From NCBI GenBank assembly GCA_964270895.1, contig OZ185444.1: 64,000 nt of DNA. One strand, given 5' to 3'. The stretch is from Podarcis filfolensis. Taxonomy: Eukaryota. A program made the position numbers and the translations under genes. Within the stretch, counting starts at the first letter, position 1; every line of letters begins with the position of its first letter. Positions 1 through 4,772 of this stretch are shown here, piece after piece. The notes under the pieces are model-generated. The model did no database searches and was not told the origin of the DNA. It was given only the letters and a program-made list of their open reading frames with translations.

Positions 1-1507
1 AGGTGGTGGAACCTGGACATTGCCCGTTCTGAAGTAGGTCTGAACCAGCGGAACATGGCTCAGTTGTACTTAGGAATCCAACAAATGTGACAATTATCTA
101 TTTGGCTGCCATGAGTGCTCAAATGCATGAAAGAGCGAGCAATGCAATTTATAAACAAATAATAAACAAATCCCTGCGAGGCAGGTTAGTCTGAGAACCA
201 GTGACTTGTCAAAAGGATGCCCTGTGAGCATTATGGCTGAACAGTGGATTTTAGCATGGCTCATCTATATCTATACCCAAAGCTTTTGCAATTATACTAC
301 CTTAGCTCACACATGTATATATGCCTAGTTAGAGATCCCACTGAAACAGGGACAAGCCCTAAAGTTGCACCAATATTCCATGAGTTTGGAGAGAGTTTAT
401 TGTGGATTTTGCCAGCATGGCCTAGCGCTGTGAGTGTTAGCCTTGGTGCTGGTGTCAAACCCAAGCTCAGCCATGTACCAAGTGGTTCTAGGCAAGCCCT
501 TTCTCTCCATCCCAACCCGTAACATAAAGAGGGGCTGCCCTCAAGGGTTTGAAGGAAGGTAAAATGATATGATATGTGTCTATCATGCACCTTAAGAGAT
601 AGGCTATAAATAGAGATTATCCCTTATATATATGCATACTAGGATACTCAGACCATACACAACTCCTTCATTGCTAATATACACCACACATCTAGAGTTG
701 TGTGTAGAAATAAGTAAGTGGAATAACAACAACAACAACTTAAAAAGAACATTCTTTGGCCAGACATTCCAATTTCTGGACCAAGAAAATTTCTGCACCC
801 TATAGTGCAGTACATATGCATAACTTCTCTTATTTTGTACAACAGATGCTGTGATCTTTACAATCTTGCATGATTTTGTCTGGTATTGCTAATTATGAGC
901 GGAGTCAAGGAAATATGGAGGAAACCGAAGCTTTAACCCAACCACCGCTCCACCTCCTGAGATTTCTGCAAACACTGCCTCCATGCTTTCAAGCAGAGCT
1001 TTATAGACACAGGGACTAGAAAAGTGCCATTTATATATGAAAAGTGGAAAAAAAGAGAAAGCTGGGATTCTCAGAAAACTAAATTCTGCACTCGTCACAT
1101 TCTGCACTTTTTCTATGCTATTGCAGAACTGTGACATGCACAGAAACCTGAATGCACTTCTGTTCTACCTAAGCACATGCCCTTAAAATACATTCAACAT
1201 CCCTCCACATTTCTATTTTGTTTCGGGAGACACGGTGGGCAAACTTATGTGGTGCAGATGGGCTTGGACAGACTTAACTGTTTCTGATTAATCAGTGCAT
1301 GCACAGCTACAACAAGACCTCTGCAAATATCACAACTGCCCCATTTCCTGCAAGAAATACCTTCAGTTTCAAGACCACCCTGCCCACCCTTTGCCCTCAC
1401 CCTCCAATCTATGCAGATTATTTCTTACACAGGAAGGCCAATGTTTCCTTGGACGATGACATCCCAGTGGTGAGCTCCCCCAAGCCATGTCTCTGTCCCT
1501 CCCATGG

Positions 1508-1708
1508 TCACCGGGAACCGTTCCCTGCTGGGGCCAAGGGGTTGGGCCACTTTTGCTCAAACTTTTCAAAAAAGAGCTCGTCCGTGAAGGGCCCGCTGTG
1601 CACAATGGCGTCAAGGATGAAGTAGAGTGCCACCACCATGCCGCTGATGAGGCAGAAGGGCAAGAAGGGTTTGAGGTGCTGCCAGAAAGTCTGCAGACAG
1701 ATGTTCAT
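1508..1708 (-). CDS. Candidate 66-aa single-pass membrane microprotein nested in TOM1 intron 11 (or alternative TOM1 terminal exon)
   Basis: ATG..TGA ORF MNICLQTFWQHLKPFLPFCLISGMVVALYFILDAIVHSGPFTDELFFEKFEQKWPNPLAPAGNGSR. 52 of 66 codons end in G/C. Residues 15-36 are hydrophobic. The in-register antisense frame is open (1487-1819 +). Pyrimidine-rich tract and AG acceptors upstream (1767, 1714). Confidence 0.6.
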   Translation of the reverse strand: MNICLQTFWQHLKPFLPFCLISGMVVALYFILDAIVHSGPFTDELFFEKFEQKWPNPLAPAGNGSR

Positions 1709-4651
1709 GGGGATCTGGGAAGACGCACGAGCCAGCTGTGGTGGTTGCCCACAAAAAGGGTCTCAGTCTGGAAGCGAAGCCGCAGGAAGGGAGGGGGGAA
1801 AAGGCACAGGAGAGCATGAGGGGCTGTAGAAGAGACAGTCCTGAGATGGCTTGCTGGCAAGAAAGTTAAAAGTAGGAGGCAGATAGTCCAGTTGGAGAAA
1901 GAGGAATAAATAGAAGGAGCCTCTTTATCGGAAAGATCACACCCGTCACAGGAGGATCAGGTTTTGCTGGAGAAGTTAACAGTGCTCAGTTCCAGGGTTG
2001 GGAGGAGAGTGGCCGGAGTGTGCGCCAAGAGGTTGGGTTTCAGCATAAGATCAGCTGCTTCCAGCCTTCTCGCTCTCTGCCTTGTTTCTGCACAAATCGA
2101 CTCCACTCCGCACTCAGCAAACCGTTTGCTGAGAACAACATTCGGACAGCGTTTTACACAGCATCCTTCTCCCTGTGTCTGGTGTGCTCGACTGGCTCTT
2201 TGCGAGGGCAATCTGTGAGTCAAGAATTATAAGCCCTTTCAGCGGCAGAAAGAGCTGCAGCAATGGCAATTAGAAGGATGCTGGCTCCCAGCCCGGTTTG
2301 CTAAGTGTTGGGGGTGGAGTGCATTTCGTGCTCAAGCGTAACCGCACATGCCCAAAACAAACATCTGTTTCTACAATCAGCAGGGGTCACTGAAAGGCTT
2401 CTTGCAGGTTAGCAATACCGAGCCTAGGACTTTTCCCTCAGACACATCTGTGGGTTTTGGAACTACAAGGCTGAATTTGCTGAGTACAATGGAAAAGACC
2501 ATATCTTCCACACCTAAGTCCTCTACGGAATAACCATGCTTAGCATTATATACTACTTCCTGAGCATGCAGAGTGCTCTGCATAATTCTAACCAGTAATC
2601 CTTCAGGCAGCCAACCTGAAAGATAGGTTGCAATTATAATTAACCCCCTATTGCAGATTTGGGGTGGAGGGGGAAAGGGTGGCTGTGAGAATAGTGGCTG
2701 CCCTGAAGCCAACTGGTGAATTCATGGCTGAGGTGAAATTGGCCTCAGGAACTTCCTCGTAGAGTTTAGCTGAAGTGTCAGACTCATCCTATTTGTGGGC
2801 AGTAAAGGAGATGGGGAATGTTTCAAGGTAAGATCCACTCAGTAGTCACTGGCCATCATTTCCTCATCCCCTTGATGTTCCACCATGATGTCCTGTTGCA
2901 CAGGGGGAGCGTTCTGGGGAAAACATTTGATGGCCCTTCTTCCCAGAAACCCCCACAGCTCAATGGTACATCATGGTATAGCATGTCAAGAGGCTTCTGG
3001 GGGAAAAGACTGTGGCTGTCAAAAGGAACACTGACTGCTTCAGCTGTTACTGCCATGTGGTATCTGTGAAATAAGGAATAAGGATGTGAACAGAAGGATG
3101 TGAATCCTTGAAATTGTCTGCAAGTTCCGCAAAAAGTTTTCATTGGAGAACTTTTGGCCTACTCTTACATTTTGGCTCTCAAGAAATCTAGATCATTGCA
3201 ACTGGGACAGCAGGAGCAAACAAGGTATGTGACTTAAGATACAGATAATGTATGGTGCAGGGGAAAGCAAACCTCCTCTTTACAGGAATATTCATTCCCT
3301 GCTTTAACCACCCCCCCTCCCCACATAGATCAAGTCATTTTTGTATGTGTGAGATTTGTTTTCAAAACTAAGGAGGAAACGGAAATTCCAAAATCTTGAA
3401 ACTTTCACTCTAGGTTACCCCAGAGAATTTTAAAAAATGCATTTATTTACTTAGTACCACAATAGCTATTTCCCTCTGGGATACTGTACAAGAAAATACT
3501 ATAAGCAAAATATAAAAATCATATGAATTCTGTAATGGAAAGAAGCAATGCTAAGTAAAGTATGTGTATCATAAGAAGAGGTTTGTCTCCTTTTCCAGGC
3601 TACAAGCATGGGCAACTGTAAGAAGCAAAATACAAGTACTGGGTATGGCTGGTGTTTACTCTCCTGGAGTATTATCTGCAGCACTGAAACACAGCCCTGC
3701 TCTCCATTTGGCCCACGCCGTTAACAATAAATTATCCATTTCACTGCTGCTAAAATTCCAGGAAGCCATTAGAGAATGACAACATAACAGACAAGGGGGG
3801 AAAAAAAAGAGTAGTGGAGAGAGTTAAGTGCTAATGAAAACTCAAGACTGCCTTCATTAGTTCTGGTGGGGATGGACAACAGCAGCAGCAATAAACAAAA
3901 CCAAAACAAATCAGTCTCCTAAAAGACCAGGGTTTTAAACAGTACAGACAGTCTGCTCTTGAACTCCACCACCAAAGAACATTCAGACTGGAAAATGAAA
4001 GATGGGTGTGACATTGGAAGAGTCACTCCTGCACCACAAGCAACCATGCAAAAGGGAAATGGAAGCTGGCGAAAGAGCAGGGACAAACATGTAGCCTTTT
4101 TCCTATCCTGAAAAACTGGGCATAAGAAGGGCTGAGCCAACACAGTTTGGAAAACAAAGTATCTAACAGCAATTCACTGGAAATAGAAACTATTTGTCCC
4201 CAAAGGGCTCTGCGCTGGCACTCAAGTCCCTAGGGGGCTTCAACTACACCTGCTGAGTACAAGCTTGTTTGTTTGGTATCTCTTATTAAACATACTATTC
4301 ATCCGACAAGCACCCTTGATTTCAGTTTCTCCTTTTCCTACTTGCGATACCCTAGAATTTAGGGCTTATTGATTTGCTTAATCACATGGAAAAAATATCG
4401 AGGGGCAGAGGGCCATAGTTTCTAGCAAAACAAGTCCTGCTTTTGAAAAAATTAAATAACAATTCTGCATGGATATAAACCATATTTTGCACCAAAAGCC
4501 AAATTCCTCTGTTTCTATACATTATGCAAACCTGCATAACTTCTCTTGTTTTGAGTTATGAATGAATGAACGTTCATTATTAAGCCTGAACAGCCAGCAT
4601 GCAACCCTTGTATACAACACCTAATTTGCAGCAGCAGGTGCTGTCACTTAC

Positions 4652-4772
4652 TCTTTGCGTTGATCGGCCAAGTTGCTGCCTCGGGTCAGTGCAAACATGT
4701 CAAACTCTTCCTCCAGCTTGCCAGAATTGTTGAGGGACTGCAGTCCTGCACTGACGCTGCCGGAACCCAGAT
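4652..4772 (-). CDS. TOM1: TOM1 coding exon 11 (121 nt; [39 protein letters not shown]), ends in phase 2
   Basis: ttcag acceptor and gtaag donor; translation matches the recalled TOM1 segment [19 protein letters not shown]; frame continuous with exon 10. Confidence 0.95.

What the first reader, a model, noticed from the sequence alone, without database searches (positions are those of the whole stretch)
1508..1708. Unrecognised 66-aa transmembrane microprotein ORF nested, same strand, in TOM1 intron 11
Seen: (1) an ATG-TGA ORF with 52/66 codons ending in G/C in a window that is otherwise AT-rich; the bias starts at the ATG. (2) One ~22-residue hydrophobic segment (FLPFCLISGMVVALYFILDAIV, 1601-1666), preceded by a basic residue and followed by an acidic/aromatic tail (FTDELFFEKFEQKW). 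(3) The in-register antisense frame is open, the usual shadow of real high-GC3 coding sequence. (4) A ~150-nt pyrimidine-rich tract (about 1770-1920) with AG acceptors at 1767 and 1714, and an AATAAA at 396-401. It has no TSD or poly-A, and I recognise neither a TE nor a named SMIM family. Inference: a small spliced gene encoding a single-pass membrane microprotein inside an endosomal-adaptor gene.
Basis: partly seen in the sequence, partly recalled or inferred. Interest (0 to 1): 0.85.

Follow-up and report, generated by a model that had tools for sequence, protein, structure and literature searches.

The report
Conserved membrane microprotein inside TOM1 intron
A 66-codon reading frame inside intron 11 of the lizard TOM1 gene is a real, selection-maintained gene for a tiny single-pass membrane protein, and it belongs to an unnamed family found from fishes to reptiles.

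Summary
The ORF (window 1508-1708, minus strand) exists as described. A 66-codon ORF alone means little, because the window holds 85 ATG-ORFs of that size or longer. Conservation is what makes it significant.

- **Coding evidence:** Eight sauropsid-type sequences keep the same ATG and the same stop, with only one 3-nt indel. The flanking intron is unalignable. dN/dS is 0.25 (LRT 54.3 against neutrality), and the other five frames fail.
- **Family:** A profile search finds relatives in a frog, a sturgeon and teleosts. There is no Pfam, PDB or named family. Apart from a few ab initio predictions, no public annotation contains it.
The proposed acceptors at 1714 and 1767 are not conserved. Instead, a GTAAGA donor 79 nt past the stop (1428) joins the exon to TOM1 exon 12 in one RNA contig. 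A frog RNA contig shows the same architecture and starts inside the intron.
- **Likely promoter:** A conserved TATTTAT box lies about 200 nt upstream (1906-1912). In one presumed bird locus it follows C/EBP and Myb sites. From memory, not tool-verified, this matches the chicken Myb-inducible "tom-1A" promoter.

Expression in the lizard is only weakly shown, and the protein's function is unknown. The scan had noted only this same stretch before.

The parts
1508..1708 (-). Coding sequence of the 66-aa microprotein (ATG 1706-1708, TGA 1508-1510)
   Evidence: Searches give the ORF. The same start and stop occur in 8 species. Omega is 0.25 with 2dlnL 54.3.
1601..1666 (-). Hydrophobic transmembrane segment (residues 15-36)
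   Evidence: Kyte-Doolittle peak. AF2 helix over residues 2-38 with pLDDT 88-95. The core is invariant across vertebrates.
1511..1600 (-). C-terminal tail: conserved motif GPFxD..FF.KF..(R/K)WP.P, then an N-x-S/T sequon (NGS in the window) near the C-terminus
   Evidence: Alignments A1 and A2. The sequon is present in 8 of 8 sauropsid-type sequences and in most fish members.
1429..1507 (-). 79-nt untranslated remainder of the exon, between the stop and the splice donor
1423..1428 (-). Splice donor GTAAGA that joins this exon to TOM1 exon 12, which lies beyond the window start
   Evidence: The RNA contig of run X4 continues from about 1428/1429 into letters that read (E)VKYEDPL. Those residues match gecko TOM1 exactly. 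The letters are absent from the window. The donor is conserved in L007.
1901..1941 (-). Conserved upstream block with a TATTTAT box (1906-1912), 204 nt upstream of the ATG. Putative core promoter.
   Evidence: It is the only alignable block between exon 11 and the ORF. TATTTAT lies at -174 to -217 in 7 of 7 species of the two clades.
4652..4772 (-). TOM1 coding exon 11 (host gene). It ends in phase 2 and has a GTAAGT donor.

Best explanation
Window 1508-1708 (minus strand) encodes a functional 66-residue single-pass membrane protein. It belongs to an ancient, unnamed vertebrate family.

**Transcript (inferred).** The coding exon sits in TOM1 intron 11. It is transcribed from an internal promoter, a conserved TATTTAT box about 200 nt upstream. 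The exon carries the whole ORF. A GTAAGA donor 79 nt past the stop then splices it to TOM1 exons 12 onward, which serve as 3' UTR. The exon therefore acts as an alternative first exon of the TOM1 locus. It is most likely the counterpart of the Myb-inducible chicken 'tom-1A' transcript.

**Protein (inferred from sequence).**
- A short basic N-terminus faces the cytosol.
- One transmembrane helix spans residues 15-36.
- About 30 residues lie on the lumenal or extracellular side. They carry an aromatic and acidic interfacial helix (GPFTDExFFEKF..W) and an N-glycosylation sequon near the C-terminus.
- At 66 residues it would be inserted after translation, like a tail-anchored protein.
- It most plausibly acts as a small accessory or regulatory subunit, binding a partner through the helix and the juxtamembrane motif.

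**Shown here:** the coding constraint, the family, the synteny and the downstream splice.
**Inferred:** the promoter, the topology, the glycosylation and the partner-binding role.
For: **Conservation and coding signal.**
- Between the window and the distant loci, only the ORF, a 41-nt upstream block and TOM1 exon 11 align.
- Alignment boundaries coincide with the ATG and the stop.
- Eight sequences share the start and stop. There are no indels in seven of them and one 3-nt insertion in the eighth.
- Variable columns by codon position are 24/26/44. Pairwise dN/dS is 0.13-0.54, and 0.22 against the closest relative, whose dS of 0.54 is consistent with the roughly 31% difference in the alignable flanking intron.
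- The codon model gives omega 0.25, with 2dlnL = 54.3 against omega = 1. The other five frames give omega 0.39-2.2 and contain stops.
- The in-frame sequence upstream of the ATG is not conserved. One species has a stop two codons upstream.

**Family.**
- The profile search found 14 proteins at E<1e-10, including frog, sturgeon, eel and Arapaima entries.
- The core is invariant in alignment A2.

**Synteny.**
- The host is TOM1 in the lizard.
- The flanking exons are also TOM1 in the second clade and the frog.
- The sturgeon prediction joins TOM1 exon 11 to this exon.

**Transcript.**
- The X4 contig spans 1428-2000 and is joined to exon 12.
- Frog contig L017 starts 124 nt upstream of the ATG. 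It is collinear with unspliced L023, has an in-frame stop upstream, contains no exon 11, and is spliced at a GT donor to exon 12.

**Promoter.**
- TATTTAT is conserved in 7 of 7 species.
- L016 has C/EBP (TGGCGCAAT) and Myb (TAACGG) consensus sites 56 and 44 nt upstream of it.
- Myb and C/EBP synergy at tom-1 is reported in PMC2175353. The Myb consensus is given in PMC2018721. A 'tom-1A promoter fragment' is named in cited titles.

**Structure.** AF2 gives a helix over 2-38 and a second helix over 46-53.
Against: - **No translation evidence.** No Ribo-seq or proteomics data were available.
- **Weak RNA support in this lizard clade.** Two bulk RNA-seq runs, sampled at about 12%, gave essentially no reads over the ORF.
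- **Modest enrichment over intron background.** 'RNA?' runs hold 0.26-0.46 of the words of the ORF stretch. They hold 0.07-0.28 of a control intronic stretch. Much of the signal could therefore be TOM1 pre-mRNA.
- **Thin splice evidence.** The splice to exon 12 rests on one contig of depth about 5. Its other end is a foreign, collagen-like chimera.
- **Contig overruns the putative TATA box.** That contig extends to 2000, upstream of the TATTTAT box, which does not fit a start site just downstream of the box.
- **Poor start context.** The Kozak context is weak (pyrimidine at -3), and upstream ATGs occur in some species.
- **NMD-prone layout.** A stop 79 nt before a splice junction is expected to trigger nonsense-mediated decay.
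- **Promoter sites not conserved.** The Myb and C/EBP sites of the presumed bird locus are not at the same place in the lizard.
- **Topology conflict.** In the frog the frame runs on into the cytosolic TOM1 tail. That conflicts with a lumenal C-terminus.
- **Unverified literature link.** The tom-1A link rests on my memory of a paper and a PDB DNA sequence that I could not read.
Confidence: 0.72

Rival explanations
1. The exon is an alternative coding exon of TOM1 itself. Spliced from exon 11 or into exon 12, it would give a TOM1 isoform with a membrane anchor. It would not be a free-standing microprotein.
For: The sturgeon prediction P0008 joins TOM1 ...ADQRKD in frame to this exon. Frog RNA contig L017 reads the domain in frame into the TOM1 C-terminal exons, giving 179 aa.
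Against: - In the lizard, exon 11 ends in phase 2. From AG 1714 the frame would hit a stop after three codons, and from AG 1767 it would read a different frame.
- Neither AG is conserved.
- All 8 sauropsid-type sequences have the stop at codon 67 or 68. In the lizard the exon ends in phase 1, which does not match exon 12.
- No annotated protein of 238-756 aa other than P0008 contains the exon.
- The frog leader lacks exon 11 and has an upstream in-frame stop.
Confidence: 0.07
2. The ORF is a regulatory upstream ORF or 'poison' element. The internal (tom-1A-like) transcript would exist to make an N-terminally truncated TOM1 tail, or simply to be degraded. The 66-aa peptide would have no function of its own.
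For: - The stop lies 79 nt before a splice junction, which is an NMD-prone layout.
- TOM1 exons lie downstream in the same RNA.
- The start context is weak.
- Steady-state RNA is very low in bulk tissue.
Against: - Purifying selection acts on the amino-acid sequence along the whole peptide, while synonymous sites change freely.
- The same domain is kept in fish at a different locus that has no TOM1 exons downstream. There it is a stand-alone ORF followed by AATAAA.
- The conserved C-terminal sequon and the transmembrane helix are features of a mature protein, not of a stalling peptide.
Confidence: 0.12
3. It is a non-coding conserved element, such as an intronic enhancer, a splicing element or a structured RNA, that happens to be open in one frame.
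For: - It lies in an intron.
- The antisense frame is also open in the window.
- The antisense frame that shares third positions gives omega 0.39.
Against: - Substitutions are concentrated at third codon positions.
- Omega is 0.25 in the sense frame only, and every other frame has stops in some species.
- Conservation begins at the ATG and ends at the stop.
- There is no Rfam match.
- Protein-level similarity reaches fishes even though the DNA no longer aligns.
Confidence: 0.04
4. It is a chance ORF, a TE fragment or a processed pseudogene.
For: The window holds 85 ORFs of this length or longer. There are no database names.
Against: - The position between TOM1 exons 11 and 12 is orthologous in the lizard, the second clade and the frog.
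- There are no repeats or inverted repeats.
- There is no parent gene in 1.8 billion representative proteins.
- Purifying selection is strong.
Confidence: 0.02

Closest known systems
Chicken tom-1A transcript and its Myb/C-EBP-responsive promoter (Burk et al. 1997 EMBO J 16:1371; Tahirov et al. 2001/2002). Cited. The paper itself was not readable here.
   Same: - The internal promoter lies in the TOM1 locus and shares 3' exons with full-length TOM1. I recall this from memory.
- In locus L016, C/EBP and Myb consensus sites lie 44-56 nt upstream of the conserved TATTTAT box that precedes the ORF.
- The string around those sites matches the crystallised 26-mer as I remember it.
   Different: - The link is not tool-verified.
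- The lizard lacks the Myb and C/EBP sites at that position.
- No database entry gives this 66-aa ORF as the tom-1A product. Whether the 1997 paper noticed the ORF is unknown to me.
Small integral membrane proteins and conserved microproteins from unannotated smORFs (SMIM-type; tail-anchored-like single-pass proteins such as the 'regulins')
   Same: - It is under 100 aa, with one transmembrane helix and no other domain.
- Both the peptide and its length are conserved.
- It is too short for co-translational targeting.
- It is probably an accessory subunit.
   Different: - It has no sequence similarity to any named SMIM, Pfam or PDB entry.
- About 30 residues with a conserved aromatic motif and a glycosylation sequon follow the helix. 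That is longer than in classic tail-anchored proteins.
- No partner is known.
Teleost and holostean paralogue next to a BTB-domain gene (Arapaima LOC108935894, KAL4641697.1; eel KAJ8382417.1)
   Same: It has the same core (RPF.PF.LIS...GPF.D..FF.KF..RWP.P) and the same sequon near the C-terminus.
   Different: - It carries an N-terminal extension of about 45-60 residues, rich in serine and proline.
- It lies in another locus, beside Arm-repeat, BTB and UNC-93 genes, not in TOM1.
- It is annotated as the first exon of a 1,898-aa BTB protein. The DNA, however, also reads as a stand-alone 124-codon ORF followed by AATAAA.
TOM1 (target of Myb1 membrane trafficking protein), the host gene
   Same: It is on the same strand and shares the downstream exons in the RNA.
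   Different: There is no sequence relationship to the VHS or GAT domains. In sauropsids the ORF is not in frame with either neighbouring TOM1 exon.

Membership tests
Conserved protein-coding smORF (microprotein gene) | Start and stop codons conserved, and all indels in multiples of three | tested here: met
   8 of 8 sequences share the ATG and the stop position. The only indel is one 3-nt insertion. The upstream in-frame sequence is not conserved.
Conserved protein-coding smORF (microprotein gene) | Purifying selection on the encoded peptide (dN/dS well below 1, specific to one frame) | tested here: met
   Omega is 0.25, with 2dlnL 54.3. The other five frames give omega 0.39-2.2 and contain stops.
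Conserved protein-coding smORF (microprotein gene) | A processed transcript carries the ORF | tested here: inconclusive
   One lizard-clade RNA contig is spliced to exon 12, and one frog spliced contig exists. Against this, raw RNA-seq gave almost no reads, and a control intronic stretch is also held by RNA runs.
Conserved protein-coding smORF (microprotein gene) | Evidence of translation (ribosome footprints or peptides) | not testable with these tools
   No Ribo-seq or proteomics tool was available.
Single-pass / tail-anchored-like small membrane protein | One hydrophobic helix of about 20 residues and no other domain | tested here: met
   Kyte-Doolittle mean 2.37 over residues 18-36. AF2 helix over 2-38. 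No Pfam domain.
Single-pass / tail-anchored-like small membrane protein | Membrane insertion and topology (N-terminus cytosolic, C-terminus lumenal, glycosylated) | not testable with these tools
   Inferred only, from basic residues before the helix, acidic residues after it, and the conserved N-x-S/T sequon.
Any named protein family (Pfam, PDB, ESM Atlas clusters) | Significant sequence match | tested here: not met
   Pfam gave nothing for the ORF or for 7 relatives. The best PDB hit had E = 0.43. Atlas scores were 0.85 or below, with no consistent family.
TOM1 protein isoform (alternative coding exon) | In frame with exon 11 through a conserved acceptor, or in frame into exon 12 | tested here: not met
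   The AG sites at 1714 and 1767 are not conserved. The frames do not match, and the stop precedes the donor. This feature is met only in the frog and in the sturgeon prediction.
Chicken tom-1A transcript | Internal promoter with adjacent C/EBP and Myb sites upstream of the first exon | tested here: inconclusive
   Met in L016: TGGCGCAAT and TAACGG lie upstream of TATTTAT. In the lizard only the TATTTAT box is conserved. L016's species is not known from a tool.
Chicken tom-1A transcript | Identity with the published tom-1A cDNA and promoter sequence | not testable with these tools
   The paper is not held, and no open paper prints the sequence.
Transposable element or processed pseudogene | Repeats, target-site duplications, multiple copies or a parent gene | tested here: not met
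   No repeats were found. The position is syntenic in several lineages. No parent protein was found.

The most novel reading that the evidence does not exclude
The Myb-inducible internal transcript that gave TOM1 ('target of Myb 1') its name does not encode a TOM1 isoform. In sauropsids it encodes an ancient, still unannotated, probably N-glycosylated type II membrane microprotein. Its family dates back to the common ancestor of bony vertebrates, and no mammalian member was seen in these searches.
Probability: 0.4. Interest if true: 0.7.

Novelty: new member of a known kind. Interest (0 to 1): 0.6.

Why it matters
- **A missing gene.** It would add a conserved, selection-maintained membrane microprotein family to vertebrate gene catalogues. 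At present the family has no name, no Pfam entry and almost no annotation.
- **One locus, two proteins.** An intron-embedded alternative first exon would let a single locus produce two unrelated proteins.
- **The tom-1A link.** If it holds, a classic Myb and C/EBP target promoter, used for a textbook crystal structure, would drive a protein that nobody has studied. That would give a concrete candidate effector in myeloid cells of birds and reptiles.
- **Evolution of the exon.** The different fates of the exon offer a tractable case of how microproteins arise from, or turn into, exons of larger genes. It is fused in frame to the TOM1 tail in a frog, free-standing in sauropsids, and next to a BTB gene in teleosts.

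Tried and rejected
- **My first guess that the host was TOM1L2.** I based it on a remembered sequence, and it was wrong. The window's exons are 80% identical to gecko and tuatara TOM1 and 67-71% to lizard TOM1L2.
Not conserved, and in the wrong frame.
- **Contig ends of L009-L012 as transcript ends.** Rejected. The ends coincide with variant sites, so these are probably population DNA data.
- **Upstream loose end of the X4 contig as an upstream exon.** Rejected. It is absent from the 64-kb window and reads as a collagen-like Gly-X-Y repeat, so it is probably a chimera.
- **Database searches.** Pfam, PDB, ESM Atlas and Rfam gave nothing.
- **Literature searches.** Peptide strings, 'TOM1 + microprotein', 'TOM1 + smORF', BTBD18, SRA run numbers and the promoter string gave nothing relevant.
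- **The 1997 tom-1 paper.** It could not be read.
- **RNA-run word shares as expression evidence.** Weakened by my control stretch.
- **Species of the Logan and ENA contigs.** These could not be determined with the tools. 'Birds' for the second clade is an inference from its short GC-rich introns and the recalled promoter match.

Full report
**1. The observation**

The minus strand of window 1508-1708 carries an ATG..TGA ORF of 66 codons.
- 52 of 66 codons end in G/C (0.79). The same register in the 200-nt flanks gives 0.52-0.56, and the window GC is 0.42.
- Residues 15-36 (1601-1666) are hydrophobic. The best 19-residue window has a Kyte-Doolittle mean of 2.37.
- The antisense frame is open (ORF 1487-1819 on the plus strand).
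- 1770-1920 is 76% pyrimidine on the minus strand.
- AATAAA lies on the minus strand at 396-401.

An ORF of this size is not remarkable in itself. The window has 85 ATG-ORFs of at least 66 aa.

**2. It is conserved as a protein**

A word-indexed search of 5.8 billion proteins returned six unnamed proteins at 66-80% identity. Four are exactly 66 aa with the same first and last positions. I fetched their contigs.

- **What aligns.** Between the window and the more distant loci, only three islands align. They are the ORF itself (1508-1709, so the boundaries are the ATG and the stop), a 41-nt block at 1901-1941, and a TOM1 exon. The multiple alignment shows the intron diverging immediately outside the ORF.
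- **Indels.** Among eight sequences the ORF has a single 3-nt insertion.
- **Substitution pattern.** Variable columns by codon position are 24/26/44. Pairwise NG86 dN/dS is 0.13-0.54. Against the closest relative (L007) dN is 0.117 and dS is 0.54, consistent with the 69% identity of the alignable flanking intron.
- **Codon model.** A GY model on the ML tree gives omega 0.25, and fixing omega = 1 costs 2dlnL = 54.3. The other five frames give omega 0.39-2.2, and each has stop codons in some species.
- **Start codon.** The in-frame sequence upstream of the ATG is not conserved. One species has a stop two codons upstream.

This is the signature of a translated ORF. It is not the signature of a nucleotide-level element. 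No Rfam family and no repeats are present.

**3. Host gene and position**

tBLASTn of named lizard and tuatara proteins places eleven TOM1 coding blocks between 21.8 kb and 4.65 kb on the minus strand. Identity is 80% to TOM1 and 67-71% to TOM1L2. Exon 11 is 4652-4772, with an AG acceptor and a GTAAGT donor, and it ends in phase 2.

In the second clade the ORF also lies between exon 11 and exon 12 of a TOM1-type gene. The frog RNA contig likewise runs into TOM1-type C-terminal exons.

**4. A wider family**

A filter-free HMM search of 1.84 billion representatives with alignment A1 gave 19 hits, 14 of them below 1e-10. Three of the weakest are repeat proteins.

Members with a source name are:
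- a frog protein (Staurois parvus, 'unnamed protein product');
- a sturgeon prediction in which TOM1 exon 11 is joined in frame to this exon;
- eel and Arapaima predictions in which the domain is the first exon of a long BTB-domain protein;
- a toothfish fragment mislabelled ZNF469.

Many unnamed fish contigs encode 111-135-aa versions with a serine- and proline-rich N-terminal extension.

In Arapaima the locus is flanked by Arm-repeat, BTB and UNC-93 genes, not by TOM1. There the DNA also reads as a stand-alone 124-codon ORF that ends ...KNITY, with AATAAA about 20 nt later.

The family core is (K/R)PF.PF.LIS...(helix)...GPF.D..FF.KF..(R/K)WP.P.

An N-x-S/T sequon at or near the C-terminus is present in 8 of 8 sauropsid-type sequences and in most fish members. 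It is absent in the frog and the sturgeon.

No Pfam, PDB or Atlas family matches. Scoring the domain alone against all proteins of 238-756 aa found only the sturgeon prediction. No annotated TOM1 isoform therefore contains this exon.

**5. Transcript structure**

From exon 11 (phase 2), AG 1714 would meet a stop after three codons. AG 1767 would read a different frame.

*Lizard-clade reads.* I laid two contig sets and two raw RNA-seq runs of a closely related organism (95-99% identity) on 1-4600.
- The raw runs, sampled at about 12%, gave three reads each, and almost none fell on the ORF.
- One contig set (X1) covers scattered parts of the intron at depth 3-6. That looks like pre-mRNA or DNA.
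- The other set (X4) has a single 626-nt contig covering 1428-2000. Its downstream loose end reads (E)VKYEDPL, which matches residues of gecko TOM1 exon 12 exactly. Those letters are not in the window.
- The junction uses the GTAAGA donor at 1428-1423, 79 nt after the stop. This donor is conserved in L007.
- The contig's upstream loose end is a collagen-like string that is absent from the window. It is probably a chimera.

*Frog.* Spliced contig L017 starts 124 nt upstream of the ATG and is collinear with the unspliced contig L023 from another run. It contains no exon 11 and has an in-frame stop upstream. It leaves the genomic sequence exactly at a GT donor to enter exon 12.

Two distant lineages therefore show the same architecture: an exon that begins inside intron 11 and is spliced to exon 12.

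In the frog the frame continues into the TOM1 tail, giving 179 aa. In sauropsids it stops at 66 aa, and in the lizard the phase no longer fits.

*Control.* 'RNA?' runs hold 0.26-0.46 of the words of the ORF stretch and 0.07-0.28 of a neighbouring intronic stretch. The enrichment is modest, so expression in the lizard is not firmly established.

**6. Promoter**

The 41-nt conserved block contains TATTTAT (1906-1912), 174-217 nt upstream of the ATG, in all seven species of the two clades.

In locus L016 a C/EBP consensus (TGGCGCAAT) and a Myb consensus (TAACGG) lie 56 and 44 nt upstream of it. TAACGG fits the PyAAC(G/T)G consensus quoted in PMC2018721.

Held papers state that Myb synergises with C/EBP at the tom-1 gene (PMC2175353). 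They also cite crystals made with a 'tom-1A promoter fragment'.

From my own memory, chicken tom-1 has two promoters. tom-1B gives full-length TOM1, and the Myb-inducible tom-1A is internal. As I remember it, the crystallised 26-mer matches the L016 string around these two sites. I could not verify either point.

If the link is right, three things follow:
- the ORF exon is the first exon of tom-1A;
- the second clade is avian;
- expression would be expected in myelomonocytic cells. That would fit the near-absence of reads in the two bulk RNA-seq runs.

The lizard keeps the TATTTAT box but not the Myb and C/EBP sites at that position.

One observation does not fit: the X4 contig extends upstream of the box.

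**7. Protein and likely mode of action**

AlphaFold2 with 18 aligned sequences gives a helix over residues 2-38 (pLDDT 88-95 in the core) and a short helix over 46-53, with mean pLDDT 74.

- **Topology.** Basic residues precede the helix, and an acidic and aromatic stretch follows it. The conserved sequon near the C-terminus argues that the C-terminus is lumenal or extracellular and glycosylated.
- **Insertion.** A 66-residue chain must be inserted after translation.
- **Function.** I infer a small type II or tail-anchored-like accessory subunit whose conserved juxtamembrane motif contacts a partner. This last step is the weakest, because nothing here identifies the partner.
- **Unexplained.** The frog fusion to a cytosolic TOM1 tail, and the BTB fusions predicted in two fishes, would put cytosolic domains on the presumed lumenal side.

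**8. Verdict**

The ORF is real and protein-coding, and it belongs to an old, unnamed vertebrate family.

The locus is best read as an alternative first exon of TOM1. It is probably the long-known tom-1A transcript, whose encoded microprotein appears to have gone unannotated.

Translation, topology and function remain to be shown.

I did not test that.

Noticed in passing
L022:10001-10400 (Arapaima gigas, CM104703.1): The fish paralogue is annotated as exon 1 of a 1,898-aa BTB-domain protein. The DNA also reads as a stand-alone 124-codon ORF that ends ...KNITY, with AATAAA about 20 nt after the stop. From memory, the BTB part resembles BTBD18. The fusion may be an annotation artefact.
   Followed up: partly
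L017:125-664 and L023:499-771 (frog contigs): In a frog the microprotein domain runs in frame into the TOM1 C-terminal exons, giving 179 aa. Its post-helix motif is degenerate (GPLSDEHFYDRID) and the sequon is lost. This may be a lineage-specific membrane-anchored TOM1 tail, or a decaying copy.
   Followed up: partly
window 1890-1895 and L007 (18-19 nt downstream of TATTTAT): Both lizard-clade sequences have a Myb-type YAACNG site (CAACTG and CAACAG) at the same offset downstream of the TATTTAT box. The presumed bird loci have theirs upstream instead.
   Followed up: no
L001:2707-3303 (same in L002-L005): A 198-codon ORF was called in the GC-rich intron between TOM1 exon 11 and the microprotein ORF of the second clade. 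It has no Pfam hit on record and is probably a composition artefact.
   Followed up: no
L018:1-460: The sequence upstream of the most divergent 67-aa homologue consists of imperfect tandem units of about 40-50 nt (GTGTGGC.GAGG.CT.GGAC..). It lacks the TATTTAT box. The species is unknown.
   Followed up: no
window 2773-3080 and 3543-3696: The few raw RNA-seq reads that did map in the intron fall here, all with the first mate on the plus strand. This may be a repeat-derived or antisense transcript.
   Followed up: no
window 1611-1817 (minus): A 68-codon ORF overlaps the microprotein ORF out of frame and starts at an upstream ATG (1815-1817). That ATG is not conserved in the other species. If it lies within the 5' UTR, it would compete with the conserved start.
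   Followed up: partly
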